64,000 nucleotides of DNA from the NCBI GenBank assembly GCA_001179505.1, contig CDMY01000299.1, forward strand, positions 66,319 through 130,318, written 5' to 3'. The stretch's first letter is position 1. The number at the start of each line of letters is the position of its first letter. Made by a program: the position numbers and the translations under genes. Of the stretch, positions 493-51,720 are shown one piece after another. This stretch comes from Vitrella brassicaformis CCMP3155 (Eukaryota; Protista; Chromerida). A model generated the notes under the pieces. That model was not told the origin of the DNA and ran no database searches. It worked only from the letters and a program-made list of their open reading frames with translations.

Positions 493-1659
493 AGTCAGGT
501 ATACGTGATTGTCTCTCTCTCCATGAGACTCAGAGAGTCTTTCGACATAAGAAAACGCCGCGTGTCTCTCCAAACAAGCCGCCAAACTCCCACCCCATGA
601 TCCCCCCAACTACCGGCCTTCTGCAGAGATATCAACAACTGCCCTCCCGAGAGAATGCCAGAGAAGAGGAAGGAAAACGGAAACAAGAGAGACAGGGAAG
701 GTGTGTTCGATCAGCCGCATCTAATCTTCCTCCATGTTGCAGGGTGCCTGAAATGACACACCAATCATTGAGTGCATGCATGTGAGTGAGAGAGTGGTCC
801 CCTGTGTACACGCTGCAATGGTGTATCGCTGCGCTGATGAAGGGAGGGAAGATCCGTCTCCATGCTTTCGTTCATCAGCGCATGCTACTCTCTCGCATGT
901 GTTTGTGTTGTGTTTGCTTTGCTTTTGCCATCTTGTGCATGTGTTGTGACGTGTGTTGCCTTGTGTTGTGTCCCGCGATGAGTTGGGGGGCCAGTTTCCG
1001 TAAAACAGACTCTAGCGGCCGGGGGAGACAAAACGGCTCGGAGGGGGCGAGCCACAGCGACAGAACGCCGGAGCGAGCTCTTCTTTTGCCATTGCGCCTC
1101 CCCTTATTCTGACTGGCGGACTTCTGTGTTGTTTCGTTTCTTTGTTTGCGGCTTGAATAAGCATTGGGCAGTCCTTCCCAGCATCCCTGTGTGTGTGCGG
1201 ACATCCATCTTGATTGATTCTGCACCTCAGACCCACACTCGACAAGACGTCTGATATCCCTCACTTCACATCACATCACATCCTCCACAGCATTCTCCAC
1301 TAAGACCCGCTCGCTGAGAGAGAGTCAACAGATACGAAGCAGCGCGAGCACCGCAACATTCCTGTTACCCCTCTTTCACGAGCGCTGAGCTCCATCCAAC
1401 GCCCACCCTCAGAGGTCACATACTCCCGACGGCTGCCTGGATGTTAGGCCTCCTGGACGGTATACCAAATGCTCTAGGGTCCCCTCCCCCGCTCTCCGTA
1501 GCGGCCAGGCCATTTGGGACCCCAGGCGGGTTGAAACGGCCGAGCTAGAATGACGGCCAACCTGAGATCCGCCACCAATAGACTATATAGCCGAGTTACT
1601 CTCCTGAGCACCCGGTGGCCCTCGTCATTGTCATGTGACCTCTTTCACGCTACCCTGTA

Positions 1660-1871
1660 GCATCCATGAGGGGGAGGGAGGGGAGGGCAACGGCATGGAC
1701 ATAGATGATGGTGAGATGCCTGAGATCGAGTTGCAGAGAGGTGCAGGTGTCAAGCGGGGAAGGGGTCGCGGCAGAGGGCGTGGCAGAGGGCGTGGCAGAG
1801 TGGCAGAGGGCGTGGCAGAGGGCGTGGCAGAGGGCGTGGCCGAGGGCGAGGGGGACAGACACAGCGGATGA
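1660..1871 (+). other. Exon-like low-complexity segment (acidic + RG repeats + VAEG repeats) containing a 12-bp tandem repeat; gene not identified
   Basis: Acceptor-like CTGTAG at about 1655-1660, then IHEGEGGEGNGMDIDDGEMPEIEL..RGRGRGRG..VAEGVAEG; GGCAGAGGGCGT tandem units at about 1769-1850. Confidence 0.3.
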
Positions 1872-2133
1872 TTAGCGATGATGAATACGAGCTGCCGCGG
1901 GGGAGGGGGGTGAAGAGAAAAGGGGGCGAGTGACATTATGTGAATAGATGATTGAGGAGACACCAGAGACATGTGTGTGAATAGTGCGTTGGATTATACA
2001 TGTGTGGACAGGGAGGGAATGTGCGGAGATGTGTGAGATGGTTGACAGTTTGCTTGCACATGTCAATGTTCCATTGCAATGTCTGTTATCGTGTCCAGCA
2101 CTTGGAGGAAGGAAACAAAGGTCATTGGCAGAC

Positions 2134-2302
2134 GAATCAGGCAGTACTGCAGCAGGAATCAAGCTATACATACACGAATCAGCACGAATCAGCAGTCTTG
2201 CAGCGGAATCAACGGAATCACGGAATCTGCTCTGAGGCCTATTTCGATTCCTTCGGATTCCGACTGGTACGGTAACGATTCCTTAGTCAGCCCATACGAT
2301 TC
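2134..2302. repeat. GAATC/GATTC motif cluster 2 with orientation switch
   Basis: GAATC at 2134, 2156, 2176, 2186, 2206, 2215, 2223, then GATTC at 2246, 2256, 2277, 2298. Confidence 0.75.
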
Positions 2303-3091
2303 CAAGATCGAGTGGTGACCCGTAGGAGTGGATGTGGGGGTGGGCGGAAGTCATTGCAGTTCTCGTTGATGGTTTCTCGTGCTGACCGACCAGTTAGCAC
2401 GGCGACACGTCGACTGAGGCAGTGTGAAGACGGAAAGACCCTCCCAGCACACGCGTACCGAGATATGGACAACAGCATGTCAGTGTGGGTGTGTGTACAG
2501 CTTCATCAGACTTGAGTGGATGTGTGTGCGGGCGGGTGGACGTCATCGCATAACTCAGTACACATACGCAAGCTTCACGAAGCATCGTCTGTCATTCGAC
2601 GCAGATGTGTCCTGTGAGACAGAGAGACTGCGATCAGAGAGAAGGCACCACCGACTCTGTCCACCGGCTGGCCCACGTGCAGACAGACCAACAGCTATAC
2701 ACCCACAGACCAGCACGACACTCACTTATCCATCTGACTTAGTCTTGTTCGTCACTCTCTGTACACGAGCAGCCCCCTCCTCACTTCATCACCAAAACGA
2801 CTGTGTCCATCAAGACTCTCACTCTCGCTCTCACACCCGCCCCAATGTTGGAGAAGCGATGCACAGCGCAAAACAATGTGTCTTGAGGTGGTCGTGATTC
2901 GTCAAGCGGCAGCAGGTCAGACAAGAGGGGAGAGACGACCTCGATCCCTCCCCATTCGCGTCACCCACGCCTACTACACGAATCAACGGCCACAACACGA
3001 CACAAACATCTTCGAGAGAAACAACCAGCAGCGACAGCAGCAGAAAGTGAGAACAGGCTCCTGCCCCACGCCTGACTGCCCTTCCATTGTC

Positions 3092-4026
3092 TCATGCACT
3101 CTCCTCCGCCGCTTCCTCTTCAGCCATGCCGCTGCCACACCCAACGTGCCACATCGTCTTCACACAGAACGCCTCAGCCCTCGTCCAGTGCCACAGGGTG
3201 CCGGCAACGCATCCGCTGATGCACTTGGCGAGGTTGGTGTACACCCGGCCGATACCGAGGGCAGCATTGCCAAGCAGCAGGAAGGTCAGCGCCCACGCCC
3301 GATGCCGGTCCCAAAAATGATAGAAGACCGTCAGACACAAGACGCCGAACAAGATGAAATGCGCCTCCCGACGCCAGCCAAGATGCTGGAGATACGCAAT
3401 ACACACAGACAGGCAACGTGGTGGCATCAGAGACGCATGTGTCCTTCTCTTCACCCGTCCGCCGCCCATTTGGTTCTGATCTTCCGCCTCAGTCTCCATC
3501 TCCTGGTCATGGCCCTCGCGCCGCATGGCCGTCACAAAGCGGTCCCGCCTGTCAGGAATGATGCCGCCCGTTGAGCCGTCGATGTGGAAGGCGACAAGGG
3601 TGGCCGCCATCGTCCCACTAATGCGATAGACGTCAGGTCGCTCGTCAGCCGCGAGTTCCCCGGCAGTTACCTTCTGCAATGCGCTCTCCAGCTTGACGTA
3701 GATCTGGCCCATGGTGGGCTGATGCACAAGGCACCGAAAAGACCTGGAGCAATGCAACCACGGGCACACACAGATAACACACAGACGAAGTGCGTGAGTG
3801 TGATGATTGGCTTCGTTCTCACCTTCAGTCGTTGTCAGCTGACGTGTGAGTTCCAAGAGTGTGCATCGTCGAGAGAGTGCGGCGCATCAGGCTGTGAAGC
3901 GTTGCGTGATCTTCCCTTGACGACATCGAGCACGCAACGCAAAAAGGGACCAAACGTGTCAGATGGGGCACGCTTACGGGAAAAAAAGGTCTTAATTCCT
4001 TGGAGTGGCGACCTCATTGGTTTCAT
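3092..4026 (-). CDS. Multi-exon hypothetical membrane protein (about 3-4 C-terminal TM helices); 5' exons uncertain
   Basis: ORF 3092-3856 has a soluble part (MGQIYVKLESALQ..), a phase-0 intron (GTGAAG..CTCCAG), then hydrophobic segments AHFILFGVLCLTVFYHFW, AWALTFLLLGNAALGIG, CISGCVAGTLWHW; head-to-head with the RluA gene. Confidence 0.55.
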
Positions 4027-4228
4027 CTGTGTCCGTAGAGTCGTCGCTCACCCGTGATTTTATCGTAAGCTACGGCGGATGCAGATCTTCAACTGACGAG
4101 AGCATCGACGTGCTGATCTGAGGCTCCTGGGGCGCTTTGCTTTGCTCCTCACCCACACCTGTCATCTGACGACGCGCTTTTCTTTATCGAATCAAGTTGA
4201 GTCCGCTGGCGCTGGAATCCCGCCCGGC

Positions 4229-7200
4229 AATGGATGCGTCGGTTGCGGACAACGGCAAGGGCGAGGCGGCGGCCGGCGAGGGAGCCGTCATGAATGGCGT
4301 GGAGGAGGGAAACAAAGACCACCAGACGGCGAAAGGTGGGAAGACCGATGCACCCACACACGAGATGTCGTCATGTGATCGGTGTTGCTCGTCAGGTTCG
4401 CCAGCGGCCGACTCGACCTCTCCCCAGACCGACAAGAGCGCCTCGCGCCCCCTCCCCGCTCAGGAGCAGCCGCAACCAACACCCAAAGCCACCGACCAAG
4501 ACGCCACGATGGAAGACGCCAGTGCTCATCCAAACAACAGCAGCAAGGACGCCCCATCGGAGTCTCCCTTCCCCTCACTCAGCGGCGCAGCACTCGACCT
4601 GCAGGCGGACAAAGACAAGGACGCAGACAAAGGGAAAGAGGCAGACAAGACAGACAAGTCCGTAGCCTCCCCGTCAGGTGCCTCAGTGCGGCCGAGCAAG
4701 ACCAACAGCGGTCTGCCCAACTGGGGCGAGGGGCTGGAGGAGGCGTCGGCCGTCATCGGGTGTGCGTACGACGAGCACCGGTGGATTCGGGAGAGGTTCG
4801 CCTGTGCGGCCGACATGATGTTTGGGAGTGACGAGGGCGGCTACTGGTTCGCCAACGCCATGCACAGCTTGTGCAGCTGGATACAGGAGCTGCCCAAATG
4901 GTCGGTGGGGTGGGCCGGTGGGCACGTGGAGGGAGGGAGGGAGGGAGGGAGGGCGCAGGGGAGAGATGTGTTTGCCTGGATGCACTTGTTGTCCTTTCTG
5001 TCTGCCGCCATGTCAGGCCGGCCATCCGCTCGTTTCGGCTCAAGCACGCGCTGGTGAAGCTGCAGCAGGCCACGAGTGCGCCCTTCCTGCGGTCGTGCAT
5101 CATCTTCTCGCCCCCCGTGTCCATCTCCATCTGCGGCGCCCAGGTGCTCCCCCACACCCTCACCCTCTTTCAGCACCTGACGGCCCCCACCGACCAGCCC
5201 TCCGAGGGGATACTGGTGGGCCGATCATTTGTCGACATGCTGCGCGAGTTCGAGCAGCGGGGGCTGAAGAACGGCAACGCGCTGAATCTCGAGTACACGG
5301 ACAGCAATGGGGGCGTGCTGAGGCCGCGTGAGGTGTATTCGCTGAAGAAGAGCGACGTGCCTGAGGTCAAGGAGGAGCCGGGGCTCATGTACGAGAACAA
5401 ACACTTCTTCGTGCTCTACAAGCCGCCCTTCTACAAGTGCGACACCAAGAGGATCTACACGGGGTAAGAGGAGAGGAGAGGAGCGGATCGAGCTCAAAAG
5501 AGAGAGATGGGATGGGCGAGGGGAGGGACCAAAGGCGTCGTGGAATGTGCATCTATTCTTCTGCCTGTATGTGTGTGTATGCAGGCAAGCTGAGCGGTCC
5601 ACAGCTGAGATCCTTATCAGCCGTGAGGTCGAGCCCTTCCAGGTAAACACACACACAGATACACAGACAGACAGACAGACAGGCAAGCCGGTCTCTATGT
5701 GTGTGCACGTCATGTGTGCAGGTGTATGTGTCGCTGACGTGGAACCACCCGTTGAGCAAGAATGTCGAGGAGGACTACGGCCTGTGTCACCGGCTCGACA
5801 AGGAGACCTCGGGGCCCGTACTCATCGCCAAGTACAAGGGGGCGCTGGAGGCTCTCAAGTCGCAAATCAGACGACACGAAGTCACCAAGGTGAGTGACCG
5901 AGATACCTTAAGAGAGGCGTGTGTGAGAGGGGGATGAGAATGTATGCTGATCTGTGTGTGTCACCCTTCCCTGTCTGCAGGAGTATTTGTGTTTGGTCCA
6001 TGGTGCGATGTCGCCCGGCACGGGACACATCGAAGCGCCCATACGGAACTTCAAAATCGGTAGACACAGACAGACAGATAGACGGCAGACAGGCATTTGT
6101 GACCGGCCTCGACCGTATCTCTCCTCTGTGTGTGTGTGCGTGTGTCAGGTCAGCGTAAGGGCCAGTCGCTGGTGCTTTGGGGGGAGGATGCCCTCCCCTC
6201 CTACACCATGTACACCGTTCTCGGACACTACCGAATGTACGCACGCATCGCATCGCATACCAGACACATACCAACACCCACACCCACACACACCACACCA
6301 TCCCTCCCTCCGTGTGTCGGTGTCCCAGGAAGCGGTCGGACCGTCCATCCAACACGCCGACACCGACCGCAGGCCGCAACACCCCTACACCCACACCAGG
6401 GCCCCGCAGGGTGCTGCAGATGGACCGGGAGATGGCGGCGGCTGGTGGTGGTGGTGGTGGTGCGTTGGAGGGGCATGACGACCGGTACACCCTCCTCAAG
6501 TGTCAGATCATCACGGGGCGGACGCACCAGATTCGCGTGCACATGCTCTACGCGGGGCACCCACTTGTGGCTGGTCAGCAGGCAGGGAAGGAGGGAGGGA
6601 GGGAGGGATCTTTGTCACATGTGTGTTGTCTTGTGTTGCTGTGATGGTACATTTGCAGACCCGAATTATTTGTCGGATGAGCAGTTGCGTCGCGACCGCA
6701 AGTGGTGCCGCAGGAACTTCCTCCACGAGTTCCACCTCGGATGGCGGTAAGCAAACCAAACCAAACCACAGACACACCACACCCACGCACAAGCATCCGT
6801 GTCCGTGTCTTGCGCCTCTCAGCGATCCCATCAATGCGCGTAAGTTTGCCGTCAAGTGCGAGCTGCCCCCCGACCTCAAGCAGGCCCTCTCCTACCTGGA
6901 GGAGGACCTCAGCCCACCGCCGCCCAGCCACATGTCGTACATCCCACCGCAGCCACAGCCATCGCCCTCACCCATCACCCAGGAGGAGAGCAAGCCGGCG
7001 GCAATAGACGAGCAGGAGGACAGCGTCATGGTCGATGGAGAGAGGAAGGAGGAGGACCAGAATCAGTCACCTGTGGACAAGGACGGCAAACAAGATGGAG
7101 GACAGGGGGAGGGTGACGGGGCACGAGTAGAGGATGTCGAGATGGCGCCCGCATCAGCGGCAGCCGATGACAATGGAGCGGACAGCAAGGACGAGGCGGC

Positions 7201-38731: not shown

Positions 38732-39671
38732 TACCTGTCTGTTTGTGCCTGGCGGCGGCTGTCTGGTGTCGATAAGGGAGTGACTGTCTGTGTCTGAACA
38801 CATCTATGAACAGTTTTCATCTATAGCTGTTCTGTGTAGCTTCAAATCTGTACATATTGCTTCCGTGATCCTTTTGCGCTTTTGTCTGTCCGCCTGCCTC
38901 TCTGTCTGCCATTCGTCCGGTTGTCTTGCAATTGGATGACAGGGCACTGTCTTTCGTCTCGTTTGCGTGCACGCAATCTGCCTTGCCTCTCTCTCTCTCG
39001 AGCTCTCTTGATACGTTTGTGTGTACATATATGTGTCTGTGTGTGTGCGTGAATCATTTGCGCACGAGTGGGACGATTATCATTCAGTGCAGAGTAATCA
39101 CTCTCAGAGTAATTCGGGCCGTGCAAGTCCATGTTTGTCCCATGCACACAATGTCATGTACGCGACAGACAGACAGAGAACAAAGACACCACACACACAC
39201 ACGATAGCCATGCACCTGCACATATGCAGCACCCGGACGCCTCTTCACAGTCAATGAAGCCTCCACTTGACTCCATGTACATCTATTCATCACCCCACCT
39301 CACCGCACCAAGATGCACACATTCGGACGGAAAGAATACACACACATCCCACGGCTGTATCTGTCTGCCCCGCGGCTGTATCTGTCTGTACACCTACGAA
39401 GACGCATAAACAAACGGCTGCGGACCCCTTGATTGTGTCACGCTACCGGCCGGAAGGCTCCTACGGCTGTCTACGATTGGAAAGCTGGATGGCTGTCTGT
39501 GTGGACAGCATTTCTTGTCGCCAATACTAGTTCTGATGGCGATGCACTGCAGGCAGAAACAAACACAAAAGACGAGAGGAGAAAAGAGAGCAGTCCCAGC
39601 AATGCATCCATCTGTTTATCTGTCTGTCCACCTGTCCCTGCGCACCTGTGGGTCGGTCTTCCCGTCTCTCC

Positions 39672-42116
39672 TTACTCACTGCGTGGTGCTGCAGTGCAGT
39701 CGGTTGCCAAAGAGATGTGGAACTGGGGACCTGACCTGCCGCCTGATCGAACACCCACCCAAGCAACATACGTGACTCGTGTATTGCGGTCTCTCTGTGG
39801 ACGCACCTTTTTCTGTCTTCAGATTGACGACGCGCAGTGGGTAGAGCGGCGGCAGGAGGATCTCCTCTTCGTGTGTGTAGAAGGATATGCGCGACAGCAG
39901 CCGGGGGGCGTACACGTGCACACGCTGCTGTTGGCGGCACGGCTCCAGCGATATCCGAAAGAACACATTCATGTACGCCAAGCCCCAGGGCATACTGAAC
40001 TTGAACCCGCCGCCATGCCGCCCTGGCCGGACATCGAAGTTCACCGTCGCGATCTTTTCCGCCAAGCCTCCGGTGAAGTTCTTTCCCAACGATTCGCTGA
40101 GTGTGGTAGAGGCGAAGGTCGGCCACGAGACCCGCATGCCCTTCTGGTACGCGAGATCGATGAGCCGTCGCGATGCCGTCGCTATGCGATAGACGTCGTC
40201 GTAGTCGTCCAGGCTGGAGGGCACCAGGCTGTCCAGATGGGTCAGGTCCGATCGGAAGAACACACGGAAGAGCGTCGCGATCCGATGGGCCGCTGCTGCA
40301 TCTGTCCAGCGCTTCTCTGGCGATGCGAGGGCTTTGTTGACATAGGTCAAGCTGCCCAAACTGTACAGGACGAACAGGTCCCTCCCGACTCCCAGCCACC
40401 GCTCCGTCAGCTGCTTCAGCACGCTATTAACCTCTCTATGCGGGGACTGGCCATAAGTGTCACGCCATAGCCGCGCGAAGGCGGTCTGGAAGCTCAATTG
40501 CAGTGGGTGCAACGACGCGTCGGTGTGGAAAATTTCCATAAACGCAGGGGGCACTCCCGTGGACTCGGAGGACTGCTTCTGGATGAGCTTGCGCAGCTGT
40601 TCCTGTGCGTCGAGCAGGCCGGTGAGGTGGTCCTTGAGTGACCGGAAATGTTCCGAGCTCTCGGTGTAGTTGTAGTCGCCGTAGTCCATTTCCTGCACAC
40701 TTCCTGTCGTGTAGTCAATACTTACTTTCCTATGGACAGCAATTTGTGCACACGCATATAGACACAAACACAATTGCTGTCCACAGGTATCTAATGTCCC
40801 ACGTGCCCTCTCACAATGTCTGCATTTCGACGGCGTCCGTGGCATCAATCAACTCAGGGCCGATCGTGAATGCCGTGTTGTTGGCGAACATGTCTGGCAC
40901 AATGTCAGTCCTCGGCGGCCAGCTCAACTGTCCGGCGCTGTAGAAAGACGGCAGGCTCTTGCTTGCACTGAAGGGCAGGAAACACGCAGGAAGAGAGACG
41001 CCGAATGCGAGCCAATCAAATGCGTACGGATGCATGGACGGGACGGGTGTCACCTGAACCGAGGCCGGAAGAGGCTGAACGCGCCGCATCGCAGAGAAGT
41101 CATGGCAGCGGCCAAGTAGCAGTCATCCACAATCAGGCCTTGCTTCAGGGCGAGCTTGCCCAGGAAGCTATCAGAGATGGCGGGGGCATGAGAGATGGGG
41201 GGGGGCGGTGAAGTTGTGCACGTCGCAGTGGTAGTGGAAGGGGCACATCATGGAGCAGCCGGCGGTCTTGTGGGCGGCGGTTGCGACCCACCTCTTGTAC
41301 TTAGGCTCGAACACGTGACACACACTGCATCGAGGCACCCGCAGAAGACCTGAGATGGTGGGCACACACACACACAGACCCCAACAGCCACGAGGTTGTG
41401 TCATTGCCGCCACACACAGCAGCCCGCTCTCCCACCTGCCAGCTGCGATTTGTCAGGATATGTCAATGGTGTGGTCACATTCGAGAAGGGAGAATGGGCG
41501 TCGACAATCCAGCCTGCAGCCAAAACACACACACACACACACACACAAGGCAGGCAGATCTTTCATCGGTGTGTGAGTAGATCTGCCTGCCATCTCTCAC
41601 GAAGGGTCAGGGATCCTCACTCACCATCTTGATGTGTCTGTTGGTGCGTCGGTTGTTGCCGCCAGACGAGAGGAAAGCGAGAATTGAGAAGGAACGGGAC
41701 GGACATGGCCACTATGGCCACGACGATGACAAAGACAGCAGTGCCCGCCCAGCGCCAGTCCTTGTTTGCCGACACTGGGCTGGCCAGCACCAACACCTTG
41801 CTGCGCTCCTGGCACACACAAACACATACTCGCACTCATCACCATGGACTGCCTCTGTCTGTCTGCCTGCGTCCATGCACACCTCTATTCCAGCGTCTTT
41901 GAGGGTGTCTTCGGGCCTCAGCTCTCTTCCGAGGCATAGCAGCCGGATGTGCTGATGGCTGAAGTCAGGGAGCGCACATATGTGCGCAAACAGCTGGTCG
42001 CAGGTGCCATTCGGGTCAACGGGCACGCGAAAGGGCTTGCTCTTGTACGTCGCCGTCACCATGAGATCAGCGTGAGGACCGCTCGAACTCTGATCAGCCG
42101 GCAAGTCCCCTTCCAT
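39672..42116 (-). CDS. Ubiquitin-like domain + single TM + NAD:arginine-type (R-S-E) mono-ADP-ribosyltransferase; about 6-7 exons; start codon uncertain
   Basis: UBL: LMVTATYKSKPFRVPV..QLFAHIC..HIRLLCLGRELRPEDTLKDAGIEERSKVLVLAS; TM: WAGTAVFVIVVAIVAMSVPFLL; ART: LYS..LTYVNKAL, DVYRI (about 40190), FASTTLS (about 40110), ISFYTHEEEILLPP (39862-39870); internal intron phases (0,1,2,2,2) chain in frame. Confidence 0.8.
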
Positions 42117-42489
42117 GTATGGATCTTCCAAAGGCGTCAGTGTCGATGCGTCCTCAGGCTGCAAAGAGAAAGGGGAGAGAACGGAGAGGTGTGATTAGCT
42201 CGCATGCTCTCGCGATCAAAGAGCGACCGAGATGCGATGAATATCTTTGGCGTTTCAATGCTTCCAGCGGACGAGACGAAGGTGCTGATACTGCAGAGAG
42301 AGAAGCGAAAGGCACATCGCGGCATTTGGTGCACCTGTACTGACGAATGCACACACAGTCACCACACGACGTCTGTAGACTGACTGCAGCAGTCATAAAT
42401 GCACGCAGGTCATACTTCCCCATACCACACACACCGCCAAAAGGTCAAACAAATTGACCAGGTAGGAGAGAGAGAGAGGGAGAGGGGGC

Positions 42490-46600: not shown

Positions 46601-46939
46601 AGGCGGTCCTTATGGAGGGAAGAACTGGGCTCACAAGAGAGAGATGGAGGAAGTTGGGAAGTGCAGAGCGTTTTGCGATGGTCCTGTCGGTTTCATTTGC
46701 ACCATCCGTAAGATGCCTCCGTCTCGTTTTTCGCCTTTTTCTCGCCGTCTTTTTTTGCGAGCTCGGACAGAAATAATTGGACAACGGCTGTTCAAGCGGG
46801 CACACTCGCCCACAGCAAGGGGCCGCGGTGCTGAAACACCCTGCGCTGCACTGAGATGGAGAGGAGGGGAGGAGGGGGAATGGAGTGCTGACAAAGACCA
46901 CAGGCGCCGCCCCTCTCCAGGCTCTATATTACTCAATCA

Positions 46940-49900
46940 ATGGCAGCCTCGAGGCTCCCATCACTGCTGGCACTCGCTCTGCTTTCTGCTGCGTCTGCTG
47001 CCGCCCTGGAGCACCGCCATTTGGTCACGAACGAGGAGATTCTCGCTGGTGCTTTTCACGATGCCGAGAAGGACGTGGTGGAGCAGTGCGGCGAAGACGA
47101 GTGCTGCTGTGTGGGCCCGTCACGGGCCTGCTGGGGCGTCTGCGGCCGAGAAATCAACTCAGGTGAGTGAGTGAGGGAGAGAAGCCCGATGAAAGACGAT
47201 GGAGTGCGGAATGTGCTGTCGTCTGTGCGAGCAGGTGAGATAATGACCCGCCAGAGCTTCTTCTACGGCCGTTTCGAGGCCACCTTTCGCGCCGCTGGTG
47301 CGCCGGGCACACTGTCGACGATCTTTCTGCTGTGGCCGCCGTCGAACCTGGAGGAGGGCTCCCAGTGGAAAGAAATCGACATCACCATCATGGGCAAAGG
47401 CGGCGGCGAGGAGCTGCACACCAACGTCGTCACGGGCAGCGCCTGGAGCGGCGACTTCGACAACTCCCTTGAGATCCACAAGCAGGACCCGCCACTGGCA
47501 GACGAGAGCAGCGGCGACGGCGGCTTCCACAACTACACTGTCGAGTGGACGCCCGAGCGTCTGCGGTGGATGGTGGACGACCAGCTGGTGCGGGAGGTGG
47601 AGGGCGACGTGGTGGAGAAGCTGGACCAGCCCATGCACCTGCACTTCTCTCTCTGGGCCGTCAAGAAGGAACTCGCCGAGTGGGCCGGGGAGTTCTCTGC
47701 GGCCAACCTGCCACTGGAAAACGGTGAGCATAGAGAAATGCGCGGCCTGGAGAGATTTCCTTTTCTGTCCACACGCAGAGTACAGGAGTGTGCGGATCTT
47801 CAGCTATGATCCCGAGTCGTCGTCTTTCTCTCACGAGTGGACGGATGACTTCAGCACCTTCAATGACGAGCGATGGGTGCGGCGGACGCACACCTTTCAC
47901 GTCAATCGGGCGCACTTCACTGCCGACGCCGTCACTGTCGACGGCGGCTCTCTTACGATCGGCATGAACGAGATCGATGGACTGGAACATGTGCTCACAG
48001 AAGACGAAATCGACAAGAGTGAGTCAGGACACACAGGCGAGAACCACCACCAGTATCCGACCATCCGTTTGGTCCGTCACGTGTGTCAGTTCTGGACACC
48101 TACGACTGCTTTGAGGAGGACACCGATTTCGATATCAAGCCCCTGGCGGATCACGACCCCCTGGGGGCTTCCGAGGCCTCGCCCCTCTCATGCGCCAAGA
48201 CTTGCCTGTCCACATCTGGATGCGAGTCGTGGTCACAAGGGCCGTGGGGGTGCTTCCTCAAAGGAGATGTCCCCGCCGACGCACAGCGTGTCAAGCGGGA
48301 CAACTACGTGTCGGGGCTCAGGAGGTGTCACGACGACGATGCCGATGACCAGACCGGCGTAACGACCACAGATGTGACAGAAGAATCGGCGGCCAAGTTC
48401 TCCCTCCCCGATTCGTGTTTCGAGAAGGGCCTCGTGTACGAGGGCGGCGACCTCCCGCTGCCCGCCAACATGACCGCCGTCGTGTCCAGCAAGGAGCAGT
48501 GCGCCGAGGCCTGCCACCTCATCAAGGAATGCGTCGCATTCACGTTCGTCCAGACCGACGACGAGAGCGACCAGCCGGAGTGCTCGGTGCACGACGAGAC
48601 GGCGAGTGAGAAGAAGGTCAACCTGGCTGGCACGGGCGTGTCTGGGCGGATGGCGTGCGGGGGCGAGGGCGATGAAGGTGAGGAAGGGGTGTTGGAGATT
48701 GATAGCGGTCCTGAACAGGTGGAGCTGCTGTCCTTGAGGGTGCTCGATTTGGACTTTGGAAAGGTCACCACGGTGAGCCGAGATGCATGGATGGATGGAT
48801 GGATCAAGAAATGTGTCGCTCGTGTGTGTCTTTCTGGTCAGCATGTGAGGAATCGCAAGGCGGCCGAGAGCCGGCTGCGCAAGACGCTGAGTGAGTCCTT
48901 CGGTGTGGGTCAAAAGGAGGTGGAGATATTCAGGCTCGTCGAAGGATCGGTCATCGTGCTCTTCAGGTGACCCGGACACGCACGCGCGGAGAGAGGAGCA
49001 TTCGGCAAAGCTGCATTGATTTGTGTATTCAGGATCGGCAGCAACGCCCCTACAGCCCTGTCCGAGACGTGGTTCAAGCTGATGCAGGACCCCTCGTCCC
49101 CGGTCAACCGCGACTTCATCATCGACCCGTCCTACCCACCCACGTCATTCGTCCTGCTCACACCCACGCCCTCCCCATCCACACCGCCCCCAGAGCTGGA
49201 AGAGCCGTCAGCCGCCGACAACGCATCGTCGACACTCACCAGCTCGAACGATCTGCAGCTGAAGCCGCCTTCAAATGAAGATGAGAGCCCGGAGGCGCCG
49301 TCAACAGAGGAGGGGGGAGGGGAGGGCGGGACGAATGGTGACACAGATGGCGGTGCTGATGGTGAGAAAGAAGGCGGGATGGGTCTGGGGCTCATCACTA
49401 CCGAGGGGGAGATCTCGCCGACGATGCGGTGGGTGCTGATCGGGGGCGGCGTACTGCTCTTCTGGATCGTCCTGGCGTCGTGCATCTGGTTCGTCTACCT
49501 CCGGTGCATGTGGTGGCGGCGGGCACTGGCTACAAGTGTGCGAACGTACTACCAGACCAACCAGAGGATCAAAACCCGCCAGCAGATGGCCGCCACACAC
49601 GCACACACACACCGGAGCGGCCACGGACGCACCCCCAAGAAGACGCGCACCCACCACACCAGCTCTCACTCCACCAACCTGGGCCACGCCTCTGTGTCGT
49701 CCATCTCATCCACCCCGCCATCAGCCACATGGTCCCCCTTCCCACAGACCCTGTCCGACGACGGCAGCATGACCCCTCCCCTGCAACGCCCCCCTCCCTC
49801 CTCGCCAATGCACCCCTCCTCACACGACCCCCGCAACAGCCCGGCAGCGGGCAGGGGGGTCGGGCACAACGACCTCTTCCCTTCGGATGAGGGCGATGAG

Positions 49901-50137
49901 CACGTGGCCGACGTCACCCCGGCCGAGAGGGGGCGTCCGACGGATAATGGTGGAGAGGCTGGGTACGGCCCCACACCGAGAAGCGTCGCGGACCGCACGC
50001 GGCGGGCGAGAGGTGACGATGGTGATGGTGTGGGTGGTGTGGAGGCTGTGGGGTTCCCCGATCCGGCTCCGTCGTCGACGAGGGCGGATCAGGAAGGGCT
50101 TGTGGAGTACCAGCCGGCGAGGATGCCCTCGGTTTGA
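46940..50137 (+). CDS. Type I membrane protein: signal peptide + circularly permuted GH16 (EIDIT) + 2 PAN/Apple + SEA-like + Ser/Thr/Pro stalk + TM + cytoplasmic tail; 6 exons
   Basis: MAASRLPSLLALALLSAASA; YGRFEATF, WKEIDITIMGK, FHNYTVEWTP..WMVD, then WTDDFSTFNDERW..FHVNR; PAN-like CFE..SCAKTCLSTSGCESWS..CFLK..VSG and SCFE..CAEACHLIKECVAF..C..VSG; RLVEGSVIV; TM WVLIGGGVLLFWIVLASCIWFVYL; intron phases consistent. Confidence 0.88.
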
Positions 50138-51720
50138 TGATGCGATCGATGACGGGAGGGGTGGTTGCGGCGCAGGAGTTTCTTTGCTTTGTTGTCGTGG
50201 TATGAGTCCATGGATGGATGGATGGATGGATAGAAGGAGGTGTGGGGGATTTTTCTCTTTTTGTTTGACGGATGGCCGCTGGTGCGGACAAACACGAAGG
50301 TCGGGTGTGGTGTGTGGTTGCGGCTGTTGATGGTTTGTGGTTGGTTGATGTGACAGTGAGTGAAGTCTTTCACCCACGCGCTCGCTCGCCCCTCTGTCGT
50401 GCTGATGTTTGGTCAACGCTGCATGTGCATGTGCGTGCAGGCCTCCTTCGTGGCTCCATGTCTCCATGTCTCCAGGTGTGTGCAGATGGATGGATGGATG
50501 GATGGGTGCTGCCATTACACTTAGGGCGTGGCGCGGCGTGGCCCTATGCAAACATGCAGTCGCTTGTGTTTTTTGAGCTCTGGTGGCTGCTGACATTGTC
50601 GATTGGTGCATGTGGTGTCTGCAACCAACTGCATCCACGGATCGGATCGGATGGCTTTTGTACGTATGTGTGTATGTGCAGGGGGCGTGGTGTTTTGTCC
50701 GAGTGCATAAGGAGGGCCCGATGTGTGTGTACAGGTAGCATCTTCCTTCCATTTGCGCATCGATGTGAGTGTGTGTACGAAAGAGACGTACACAAAGGGA
50801 TCATCACATATATACGTACGTACATACGACACATCCATAACGGTGCGGTGTGTGTGATTCATTCATTGATGTCATTGATGTGTGGCGCGTGTGTGTGTGG
50901 ATGCGACGAGGTAGGTCCTATCAAAATACGTGTGGATATTCCTTCCATCTCCATCCGATACTTCCTGTCTAATCCTTCCTCCTCCTGCTGCGCTTTGACT
51001 CACTCTTACATTGCTCATACACACACACATACATACACACATACGTACATACGTACACACGTACACACATAATCGTCTATCAACGATCGGTCGGTCTTTG
51101 TATCCATTCTATACACTCTCCCTCTCTCTCTCTCTCTCTAATAATTCACCCTCGATTGCATCATGTTGATTGAAAGTGGCGGATCTGCGATTGATAAGGC
51201 TGGCCCACCACCCCACAAAAATGCGATGCTAGCGTGTCCTTAGTCGCCCTGGATGCGCCTCTTTCTCTCTCTGTCGGTGAGTAAGACTGTGAATGAATGA
51301 ATGCGGGTGTTTCGTGCATTGCTGCTGTGTGCTGGGACCGGCTGCCACATGAATGGATGGATGGATGGATGCGTTGATGGGTGGACGTCGGCCGACCTTT
51401 TGTCTCTCCCTCTCTGTGTACTCCTACACTTGCCTACACTTGAGTGCTCGTTCTGATGAGCGACCAATACCTTCTCTTGACCGAGACACATCCATTCACG
51501 AGCCACACCCACACCACACACGGGAGTCCACACCCAACGACGCCAGCATCGCACGCATGATGTCTTTCCGCACCACGACCGAGCGAGCATGAAAATGCAG
51601 GCCACTCACGCACGGACAGCACGAGAAGGCAGGGAAAAAACGAGGCGCGACGACAGAAGCGAAAAGTCCCGTGTCGTGTGGTATGGCGAGATACCCCAAT
51701 ACGACGGGTTGCCCGTCAAG

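What the first reader, a model, noticed from the sequence alone, without database searches (positions are those of the whole stretch)
46940..50137. Candidate beta-glucan receptor/adhesin: GH16 pseudo-enzyme + 2 PAN/Apple + SEA-like + TM
Seen in sequence: the catalytic motif reads E-I-D-I-T (47372-47386) instead of E-x-D-x-E. Known: in GH16 lichenases the first Glu is the nucleophile and the last the acid/base; inactive GH16 domains serve as glucan sensors in invertebrates; PAN/Apple domains are adhesive modules of apicomplexan microneme proteins. Inference: a surface glucan-binding receptor in a free-living relative of apicomplexans, with a long cytosolic tail ending in a PDZ-type motif (PSV).
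Basis: partly seen in the sequence, partly recalled or inferred. Interest (0 to 1): 0.8.

Follow-up and report, generated by a model that had tools for sequence, protein, structure and literature searches.

The report
Membrane-anchored lichenase relic lacking its acid/base
A nuclear gene of the alga Vitrella brassicaformis encodes a surface membrane protein whose bacterial-type beta-glucanase domain has lost one of its two catalytic glutamates but kept its sugar-binding groove, so it most likely binds rather than cuts a glucan; this is a plausible but untested reading.

Summary
Window 46940-50137 (+) is a six-exon, expressed gene, identical to Vitrella brassicaformis CEM00815.1 / A0A0G4ESG9 (954 aa).

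- **Splicing:** all five GT..AG introns (55-72 nt) appear as joints in transcript contigs.
- **Thr codon:** ACC at 47384-47386 is read unchanged in an independent contig.
- **GH16 domain:** it is a Fibrobacter-type, circularly permuted GH16 lichenase fold (AF2 pLDDT 93; TM 0.83-0.92 to 1MVE/1ZM1). E-I-D-I-T aligns on E-V-D-I-E. The acid/base Glu is present in 103 of 105 full-length relatives.
- **Retained features:** P0001 keeps 31 of 38 family-conserved positions, as many as its catalytically intact paralogues. These include the nucleophile, the Asp and the aromatic platform.
- **Paralogues:** Vitrella has at least five paralogues forming one clade, consistent with one old bacterial transfer. 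Three keep E-D-E. A second PAN-rich one (CEM00455.1) has Ala at the same site, probably an independent loss.

Two PAN/Apple domains, one TM helix and a 208-residue disordered tail are supported. The SEA-like module is only tentatively supported. The "PDZ motif" is not supported: position -2 is Pro.

Glucan binding and receptor function are inference. The scan noted this family on other pieces of the same genome. Verdict: a new variant of a known kind (non-catalytic GH16 binding proteins), of moderate interest.

The parts
46940..47162 (+). Exon 1: start codon, signal peptide (res 1-22, 46940-47005) and a 6-Cys pre-domain (res 49-68, 47084-47143)
   Evidence: ORF and translation. Hydropathy peak at res 5-24. 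The pre-domain matches those of paralogues P0099 (E 3e-6) and P0156 (E 1e-6). The exon end is seen as a joint in X6.
47163..47234 (+). Intron 1, 72 nt, GT..AG
   Evidence: Joint 47159->47232 (cut +3), skipping 72, in transcript contig X6 record 17.
47235..47723 (+). Exon 2: first, larger part of the circularly permuted GH16 domain (res 75-237)
   Evidence: Pfam PF00722 at 2.6e-23. PDB phmmer best hits are F. succinogenes glucanase 3axd/1mve/1zm1, residues 9-159.
47372..47386 (+). Catalytic-motif remnant E121-I-D123-I-T125. Thr codon ACC at 47384-47386 replaces the general acid/base Glu.
47724..47778 (+). Intron 2, 55 nt, GT..AG, inside the GH16 domain
   Evidence: Joint in X6 record 17.
47779..48018 (+). 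Exon 3: permuted C-terminal part of the GH16 domain. These strands are N-terminal in Bacillus-type lichenases. The domain ends near res 305 (47981).
   Evidence: phmmer aligns it to residues 166-226 of 3axd/1mve (E 8e-6). The AF2 model of res 66-322 has pLDDT 92.9. Foldseek TM is 0.83-0.92 to Fs glucanase.
48019..48089 (+). Intron 3, 71 nt, GT..AG, at the GH16/PAN1 junction
   Evidence: Joint in X6. An intron lies at the same domain junction in paralogues P0079 and P0026.
48107..48328 (+). PAN/Apple domain 1 (C324-C397, six Cys)
   Evidence: Alone it gives only a weak PAN_4 hit (17.9 bits, E 0.003). It was counted as a second PAN_4 stretch. It aligns with PAN domains of P0079 and P0026.
48416..48658 (+). 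PAN/Apple domain 2 (C427-C507, six Cys)
   Evidence: PAN_4 at 4.4e-12 and PAN_1 at 4e-8, both above cut-off. The best PDB sequence hit is Toxoplasma MIC4 apple domains, 4a5v, E 0.0018.
48659..49192 (+). SEA-like module (res 508-640), spanning exons 4-6 with introns 4 (48773-48841) and 5 (48967-49032). The G580-S581 turn in V-E-G-S-V-I-V lies at 48944-48949.
   Evidence: Atlas structure search gives SEA, MSB2_C and dystroglycan at TM 0.54-0.64. The strand and helix order comes from a low-confidence model. There is no Pfam or PDB sequence hit. The introns are seen in X1 and X6 contigs (tables 5, 8).
49193..49417 (+). Gly/Glu/Pro/Ser/Thr-rich stalk (res 641-715)
   Evidence: Composition.
49427..49510 (+). 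Single transmembrane helix (res 719-746), followed by W-W-R-R
   Evidence: Kyte-Doolittle maximum of 2.35 over res 716-747, the only internal peak. This stretch (49374-49490) is not covered by transcript contigs.
49511..50137 (+). Cytosolic tail (res 747-954), rich in Ser, Pro, Arg, Thr, Gly and His, with no domain found. It ends M-P-S-V, followed by the stop codon.
   Evidence: No Pfam family. Composition. Transcript contigs cover 49575-50072 without joints.

Best explanation
The gene encodes a type I surface membrane protein of Vitrella brassicaformis. Its outermost module descends from a bacterial, Fibrobacter-type circularly permuted GH16 lichenase. That module has lost the general acid/base Glu (now Thr125). 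It keeps the nucleophile Glu, the auxiliary Asp and the aromatic sugar-stacking platform. The most likely working mode follows. The GH16 module holds a beta-glucan chain in its groove without cleaving it, so it acts as a lectin. The two PAN/Apple modules add binding sites. A SEA-like module and a Gly/Glu/Pro/Ser/Thr-rich stalk hold the head away from the membrane. The 208-residue disordered tail links it to the cell interior. Shown here: the gene model, its expression, the fold, the loss of the acid/base, the retention of the other conserved positions, and the existence of catalytically intact paralogues. Inferred: loss of hydrolysis, glucan binding, surface location, and any signalling or adhesion role.
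For: The gene is real and expressed, with five introns seen in transcript contigs, and the model equals CEM00815.1. The fold is intact: AF2 pLDDT 92.9, and the top PDB folds are Fs 1,3-1,4-beta-glucanase at TM 0.83-0.92. The acid/base column is Glu in 103 of 105 relatives but Thr here. In GH16 the two Glu of E-x-D-x(x)-E are the nucleophile and the general acid/base (PMC4606783). Of 38 columns at least 80% conserved in 103 bacterial-type domains, this protein keeps 31. That equals intact paralogue P0099 (31) and exceeds intact P0026 (28). The retained positions include E11, F40, W54, E56, D58, N72, W141 and W148 in Fs numbering, which argues for continued constraint on the groove. A second PAN-rich paralogue (P0079) has Ala at the same column, while three paralogues keep E-D-E, so loss of the acid/base recurs in the large multi-lectin members. 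Non-catalytic GH16 binding proteins with mutated catalytic residues are an established kind (PMC6827312). A GH16 catalytic-Glu mutant still binds laminarin by ITC (PMC4606783). Signal peptide, single TM helix and PAN domains.
Against: No binding or activity data exist. Several groove residues differ from the family consensus: R137H, N139S, N215A, Y42L, Q70H and R26T. N139S and the loss of N215 are shared with the intact Vitrella paralogues. The ligand may therefore not be lichenan-type glucan. The terminal branch is 3-4 times the family median, which could also mean relaxed constraint. No orthologue was found in another species, so conservation of Thr cannot be tested. Rv0315 shows that a GH16 protein can be inactive and bind no glucan at all (PMC4606783). 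Surface location rests on hydropathy only. The TM region is not covered by transcript contigs.
Confidence: 0.55

Rival explanations
1. The GH16 module is a structural relic that binds no glucan. Binding, if any, comes from the PAN/Apple domains (to protein or another glycan), and the former enzyme serves as a spacer or has acquired a different ligand.
For: Groove substitutions R137H, Y42L, Q70H, R26T and N215A. Long terminal branch. Rv0315 is a precedent for a GH16 that binds no glucan (PMC4606783). PAN/Apple domains are themselves carbohydrate- or protein-binding modules, and PAN2 is nearest to the Toxoplasma MIC4 apple domain.
Against: It retains 31 of 38 family-conserved positions, as many as catalytically intact paralogues, including all the main aromatic platform residues. 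The fold is predicted with high confidence. A mere spacer would not be expected to keep E56, D58, W54, W141 and W148.
Confidence: 0.25
2. It is still an enzyme. Another group supplies the acid/base: His136 at the Q70 position on the neighbouring stretch, a loop Glu132/133, or an exogenous base. Alternatively it acts on substrates that need no acid catalysis, as plant myrosinase does (own knowledge).
For: The nucleophile and Asp are kept. The Q70 column is His here. The only other E-I-D-I-T protein found, P0030 (bacterial-looking and otherwise fully conserved), has Glu at the Q70 column, which could be a relocated acid/base.
Against: His, Glu and Leu at the Q70 column also occur together with an intact E60 in 4, 6 and 5 rows, so the pairing is not specific. 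Paralogue P0079 has Ala plus Leu, which cannot be catalytic. Acid/base mutants of GH16 lichenases are essentially inactive on polysaccharides (Viladot et al. 1998, as cited in PMC4606783). No model coordinates were available to check geometry.
Confidence: 0.12
3. An artefact: an assembly or base-calling error, a bacterial contaminant, or a decaying pseudogene.
For: None found.
Against: The Thr codon differs from Glu codons at three bases and is identical in an independent transcript contig. Five spliceosomal introns, two of them bordering or inside the GH16 domain, are removed in RNA-derived contigs. The reading frame is open over 954 codons. GC content matches the neighbourhood.
Confidence: 0.02

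Closest known systems
Fibrobacter succinogenes 1,3-1,4-beta-D-glucanase (PDB 1MVE, 1ZM1, 3AXD), the natural circularly permuted GH16 lichenase
   Same: Same fold and same permuted order of segments: exon 2 aligns to residues 9-159 and exon 3 to 166-226. TM is 0.83-0.92 and identity 33-34%. Same nucleophile Glu, Asp and aromatic platform.
   Different: The acid/base Glu60 is Thr. R137H, N139S, Q70H, N215A and Y42L also differ. The gene is eukaryotic and intron-bearing, and the domain is fused to PAN, SEA-like and TM modules instead of forming a secreted bacterial enzyme.
Non-catalytic GH16 beta-glucan binding proteins of invertebrates (betaGRP/GNBP/LGBP, within CAZy subfamily GH16_4; PMC6827312)
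   Same: A GH16 jelly-roll with mutated catalytic residues, proposed to bind rather than cut beta-glucan; extracellular.
   Different: Different GH16 branch. Here the nearest relatives are bacterial permuted lichenases, not metazoan beta-1,3-glucanases. Only the acid/base is lost. The protein is membrane-anchored with PAN/SEA-like modules. Binding is untested.
Vitrella paralogues CEM17572.1/A0A7S1PDF3 (P0153/P0026), CEM31690.1 (P0099), CEM35486.1 (P0114/P0156) and CEM00455.1 (P0079)
   Same: They form one clade of permuted GH16 domains (UFBoot 96 / SH-aLRT 86). They share N139S and the loss of N215. GH16 is followed by PAN in four of the five. They are membrane- or GPI-like anchored.
   Different: P0026, P0099 and P0156 keep E-x-D-x-E. 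P0079 has Ala at the acid/base site, about five PAN domains and a C-type lectin domain. Only the window's protein has the SEA-like module and a long cytosolic tail.
Signalling mucins and SEA-bearing receptors (MUC1, fungal Msb2, dystroglycan)
   Same: A juxtamembrane SEA-like fold, a Ser/Thr/Pro-containing stalk, a single TM helix and a cytosolic tail. The Atlas fold matches include SEA, MSB2_C and dystroglycan. A G-S-V-I-V turn resembles the SEA G/SVVV cleavage site (own knowledge).
   Different: No sequence-level SEA match. Autoproteolysis is untested. The head is a lichenase relic plus PAN domains, not a mucin repeat array.
Apicomplexan PAN/Apple microneme adhesins (e.g. Toxoplasma MIC4, PDB 4A5V)
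   Same: PAN2 is nearest to the MIC4 apple domains among solved structures. Tandem PAN modules sit on a secretory-pathway protein in a close relative of apicomplexans.
   Different: The similarity is weak (E 0.0018). No apicomplexan PAN protein with a GH16 module came up in the searches made here. There is no evidence of microneme targeting.

Membership tests
Glycoside hydrolase family 16 (fold and homology) | Beta-jelly-roll fold; Pfam PF00722 above the gathering score | tested here: met
   PF00722 at 82.8 bits against a cut-off of 22. AF2 pLDDT 92.9 and Foldseek hits to GH16 structures.
Glycoside hydrolase family 16 (catalytically competent member) | Motif E-x-D-x(x)-E with both the nucleophile and the acid/base Glu | tested here: not met
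   The motif is E-I-D-I-T, and there is no Glu at +4 or +5.
Fibrobacter-type circularly permuted lichenases | Permuted segment order: the catalytic strands come first and the Bacillus-type N-terminal strands come last | tested here: met
   Exon 2 aligns to Fs residues 9-159 and exon 3 to 166-226. The top fold hits are 1MVE/1ZM1/3AXD and the engineered permutants 1CPM/1CPN.
Fibrobacter-type circularly permuted lichenases | Hydrolysis of beta-1,3-1,4-glucan | not testable with these tools
   Needs an enzyme assay. The missing acid/base predicts a loss of activity.
PAN/Apple domain | Pfam PAN model above cut-off and the six-Cys pattern | tested here: met
   PAN2: PAN_4 at 46.3 bits (cut-off 27) and PAN_1 at 33.4 bits (cut-off 21.4). 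PAN1: only 17.9 bits alone, but it has six Cys and aligns with the paralogues' PAN domains.
SEA domain | Sequence match to PF01390 or to a solved SEA domain | tested here: not met
   No Pfam family at E up to 10. No PDB sequence hit at E up to 10.
SEA domain | Ferredoxin-like beta-alpha-beta-beta-alpha-beta fold with a G/S cleavage turn | tested here: inconclusive
   The Atlas model matches SEA domains at TM 0.59-0.60. My single-sequence AF2 model is poor (pLDDT 43), but it shows that order with G580-S581 between two strands.
Invertebrate betaGRP/GNBP-type non-catalytic GH16 (GH16_4) | Homology to the GH16_4 beta-1,3-glucanase branch | tested here: not met
   The nearest relatives are bacterial permuted lichenases from Fibrobacter, Chitinispirillaceae, Sorangium and Cellvibrionaceae. 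It works like this group, if at all, by convergence.
Class I PDZ-binding C-terminus | Ser/Thr at position -2 and a hydrophobic residue at position 0 | tested here: not met
   The C-terminus is M-P-S-V, with Pro at position -2. The consensus is from established knowledge.
Type I single-pass membrane protein | N-terminal signal peptide and one internal hydrophobic helix with flanking positive charges on the C-terminal side | tested here: met
   Two hydropathy peaks only, at res 5-24 and 716-747, the second followed by W-W-R-R. No dedicated predictor was available.

The most novel reading that the evidence does not exclude
A glucan-sensing receptor built from a horizontally acquired bacterial lichenase. 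The acid/base-less GH16 head, with its PAN domains, would grip a beta-glucan of the alga's own wall or of a partner organism. The SEA-like juxtamembrane module and long tail would report strain or occupancy to the cell. That would make it an alveolate counterpart of the fungal Msb2/Wsc sensors or of plant wall-sensing receptor kinases. The same enzyme-to-lectin conversion would have happened twice independently within one gene family, on the PAN-domain scaffold that apicomplexans later used for host adhesion.
Probability: 0.2. Interest if true: 0.75.

Novelty: new variant of a known kind. Interest (0 to 1): 0.55.

Why it matters
If the reading holds, it gives a clean natural example of an enzyme turned into a binding module. 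Active and inactive paralogues sit side by side in one genome as built-in controls. It also documents a bacterial lichenase gene transferred into a chromerid, where it acquired introns, was fused to PAN/Apple modules and multiplied. That bears on how the extracellular adhesion toolkit of apicomplexan parasites was assembled in their free-living relatives. It points as well to an unknown beta-glucan ligand at the Vitrella surface or in its coral-reef surroundings. If it fails, the protein is one more uncharacterised multidomain surface protein.

Tried and rejected
- **Word-based homologue searches.** Searches with the whole protein and with the GH16 region alone found only the protein itself and one distant 527-aa hit. 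The paralogues are too divergent (about 30% identity) for shared 5-mers. They came instead from the exhaustive representative search and the cluster look-ups.
- **Metagenome scan for orthologues.** It gave only GH16-region matches. The longer ones are at most 33% identical, and short segments of about 23-40 residues reach 40-61%. Conservation of Thr across species could therefore not be tested.
- **GH16-only phylogeny.** It cannot decide between one and two losses of the acid/base. The internal nodes have 25/0 and 82/45 support, and the AU test does not reject P0001+P0079 as sisters (p 0.32). The case for two losses rests on the two pre-domain types and on one shared PAN1/PAN2 intron.
- **Single-sequence AF2 of the SEA-like stretch.** The model was too poor (pLDDT 43) to use in a fold search, so none was run on it.
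- **Q70H as a specific partner of the E60 loss.** This was considered and weakened, because H, E and L occur at that column alongside an intact E60 in other family members.
- **N139S and N215A as signs of decay.** This was rejected, because the catalytically intact Vitrella paralogues share both changes.
- **Literature.** Searches for Vitrella wall glucans and for residue-level Fibrobacter enzyme papers found nothing usable. The residue roles of the Fs enzyme beyond the motif rest on my own knowledge and on PDB entry titles. The chromerid genome paper does not mention this architecture in its main text.
- **Model coordinates.** They were not available to scripts, so no geometry check of His136 was possible.
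Full report
**Gene model and identity**

The region 46940-50137 on the + strand holds one six-exon gene.
- The exons are 46940-47162, 47235-47723, 47779-48018, 48090-48772, 48842-48966 and 49033-50137.
- All five introns are short (72, 55, 71, 69 and 66 nt) and GT..AG.
- All five are removed in contigs of two public runs from different studies (X6 of 2013, X1 of 2015). These contigs must therefore derive from RNA (tables 5 and 8).
- The stretch 49374-49490, which holds the TM region, is not covered by those contigs.

The exhaustive protein search with exon 2 returned a 954-residue public protein, P0001. It is identical to the model: Vitrella brassicaformis CCMP3155 CEM00815.1 / UniProt A0A0G4ESG9, named only "GH16 domain-containing protein". 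All whole-protein work used that record.

**The observation**

E-I-D-I-T is encoded at 47372-47386, and the Thr codon is ACC at 47384-47386.
- It aligns on E-V-D-I-E of the Fibrobacter succinogenes 1,3-1,4-beta-glucanase (E 6e-29).
- ACC differs from GAA/GAG at three bases.
- X6 transcript contig 17 covers 47232-47722 with no differing letter.
- Among 105 full-length domains taken from the 150 best cluster representatives, this column is Glu in 103 and Asp in 2.
- In GH16 the two glutamates of E-x-D-x(x)-E are the nucleophile and the general acid/base (PMC4606783, citing Viladot et al. 1998).

**What the GH16 domain is**

It is the naturally circularly permuted, Fibrobacter-type lichenase.
- Exon 2 aligns to residues 9-159 of the solved enzyme, and exon 3 to residues 166-226.
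- An AlphaFold2 model built on a 101-sequence alignment has mean pLDDT 92.9.
- Its best PDB matches are 3AXE, 3AXD, 1MVE and 1ZM1 at TM 0.83-0.92, followed by the engineered permuted Bacillus enzymes 1CPM and 1CPN.
- The nearest relatives are bacterial and only 28-42% identical. They come from Fibrobacter, Chitinispirillales, Treponema, Sorangium/Polyangiaceae, Cellvibrionaceae, Bacteroidales and Cytophagales.
- Introns lie just before, inside and just after the domain. The gene is thus a long-resident nuclear gene of bacterial ancestry, not contamination.

**A family with internal controls**

The cluster look-ups showed at least five Vitrella paralogues.

| Protein | Accession | Motif | Architecture |
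|---|---|---|---|
| P0001 | CEM00815.1 (window gene) | E-I-D-I-T | pre-domain, GH16, PAN, PAN, SEA-like, TM, long tail |
| P0026 / P0153 | A0A7S1PDF3 / CEM17572.1 | E-I-D-I-E | GH16, PAN, PAN, TM |
| P0099 | CEM31690.1 | E-I-D-F-E | GH16 only |
| P0114 / P0156 | CEM35486.1 | E-I-D-F-E | GH16, one PAN, C-terminal hydrophobic stretch |
| P0079 | CEM00455.1 | E-I-D-F-A | GH16, about five PAN domains, a C-type lectin domain, GPI-like end |

- In a careful ML tree of 54 rows, the five Vitrella domains form one clade (UFBoot 96, SH-aLRT 86). This is consistent with one transfer followed by duplication.
- Inside the clade the order is unresolved. An AU test does not reject P0001 and P0079 as sisters (p 0.32).
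- Outside the domain the evidence splits the two acid/base-less proteins. The Cys-rich pre-domain of P0001 matches P0099 and P0156 (E 3e-6 and 1e-6). That of P0079 matches only P0026 (E 8e-7).
- P0079 and P0026 also share a PAN1/PAN2 intron.

I therefore think two independent losses (Thr and Ala) more likely than one, but this is not settled. An intron at the GH16/PAN1 junction in P0001, P0079 and P0026 suggests that the fusion itself is ancestral.

**Is the groove still constrained?**

I took the 38 columns that are at least 80% conserved in 103 bacterial-type domains.
- Retention is 31 for P0001, 24 for P0079, 28 for P0026, 31 for P0099 and 34 for P0156. The bacterial median is 36 and the minimum 26.
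- P0001 keeps E11, F40, W54, E56, D58, N72, W141 and W148 (Fs numbering).
- N139S and the loss of N215 occur in all five paralogues, so they are lineage traits and not decay.
- Among these 38 columns, only E60 and Q70 changed in both acid/base-less paralogues and in none of the three intact ones (H in P0001, L in P0079).
- The Q70 column also varies elsewhere with E60 intact, so I give that pairing little weight.
- R137H, Y42L and R26T are further differences. The ligand may thus differ from lichenan.
- The terminal branches of P0001 and P0079 are the longest in the tree, at 1.3-1.9 against a median of 0.4.

**The rest of the protein**

- **PAN2** (C427-C507) is a clear PAN/Apple domain. It is nearest to the Toxoplasma MIC4 apple domains among solved structures.
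- **PAN1** (C324-C397) is weak by Pfam alone. It has the six Cys and aligns with the PAN domains of the paralogues.
- **Residues 508-640** have no sequence-level family.
  - The ESM Atlas model of this protein matches SEA domains, fungal MSB2_C and dystroglycan at TM 0.54-0.64.
  - My low-confidence model shows a beta-alpha-beta-beta-alpha-beta order with G580-S581 in the turn of V-E-G-S-V-I-V. This recalls the SEA cleavage site (own knowledge). "SEA-like" is tentative.
- **Membrane topology.** Hydropathy gives one signal-like peak and one TM helix at res 716-747.
- **The tail** (res 747-954) has no domain and is rich in Ser, Pro, Arg, Thr, Gly and His. It ends M-P-S-V. With Pro at position -2 this does not fit the class I PDZ consensus.

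**Interpretation**

- Most likely (0.55): the protein displays a non-hydrolytic lichenase-derived lectin head with PAN modules on a stalked type I anchor.
- Precedents: the non-catalytic GH16 binding proteins with mutated catalytic residues (PMC6827312), and catalytic-Glu mutants that still bind laminarin (PMC4606783).
- Rivals: a relic head with another ligand or none (0.25; Rv0315 is a warning, PMC4606783); residual catalysis through His136 or another group (0.12); and an artefact (0.02).
- No orthologue was found in other organisms, so selection on Thr cannot be measured.
- The chromerid genome paper mentions many sugar-binding secreted proteins but not this architecture.

**Verdict**

This is a new variant of a known kind, the non-catalytic GH16 binding proteins. 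It arose here from a different, bacterial, circularly permuted branch and was built into a PAN/SEA-like/TM scaffold. The scan had already noted this stretch and two further paralogues on other pieces of this genome. Interest is moderate (0.55), because the function is untested and the protein is already in public databases. The paired active and inactive paralogues nevertheless make it directly testable.

Noticed in passing
P0030 (284 aa, JGI/IMG metagenome contig of 372 kb; not in the window): A bacterial-looking permuted GH16 carries the same E-I-D-I-T motif. It has Glu at the Q70 column and is otherwise almost fully conserved. It also has a signal peptide and a C-terminal hydrophobic anchor. 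This may be a relocated acid/base or a bacterial non-catalytic variant.
   Followed up: partly
L116 (Vitrella contig CDMY01000295.1), gene at 1501-5686: Paralogue CEM00455.1 (P0079) has 15 exons. It reads GH16 with E-I-D-F-A, about five PAN domains, a C-type lectin domain and a GPI-like C-terminus. It has lost more groove residues (E11S, N72S, W148E) than the window's protein.
   Followed up: partly
L117 (Vitrella contig CDMY01000491.1) and proteins P0153, P0026, P0155; also P0114 and P0156: The public gene models look truncated. CEM17572.1 stops at 412 aa, whereas transcript-derived versions (517 and 602 aa) continue through a second PAN domain and a TM helix. CEM35486.1 is a partial form of the 531-aa P0156.
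   Followed up: partly
window 46800-50300, runs X2 and X3: Both runs are listed as holding all sampled words of the stretch. When laid, however, they give only 18-24-nt pieces at simple repeats such as the CA run at 49594-49612. Presumably the genomic contigs were filtered out. This is unexplained.
   Followed up: no
window 48782-48804, 50210-50231, 50485-50505, 51349-51371: (GATG)n / (ATGG)n microsatellites recur in intron 4 and in the 3' flank. A CA/CATA-rich array lies at 51016-51071.
   Followed up: no
window 39527-42158: Earlier scan notes flag a neighbouring gene read as a ubiquitin-like domain, a TM helix and an Arg-type ADP-ribosyltransferase ectodomain. I did not examine it.
   Followed up: no
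window 47084-47143 (res 49-68): A small six-Cys pre-domain (C-x4-C-C-C-x6-C-x3-C) precedes the GH16 domain. It is shared with P0099 and P0156 and has no known family.
   Followed up: partly
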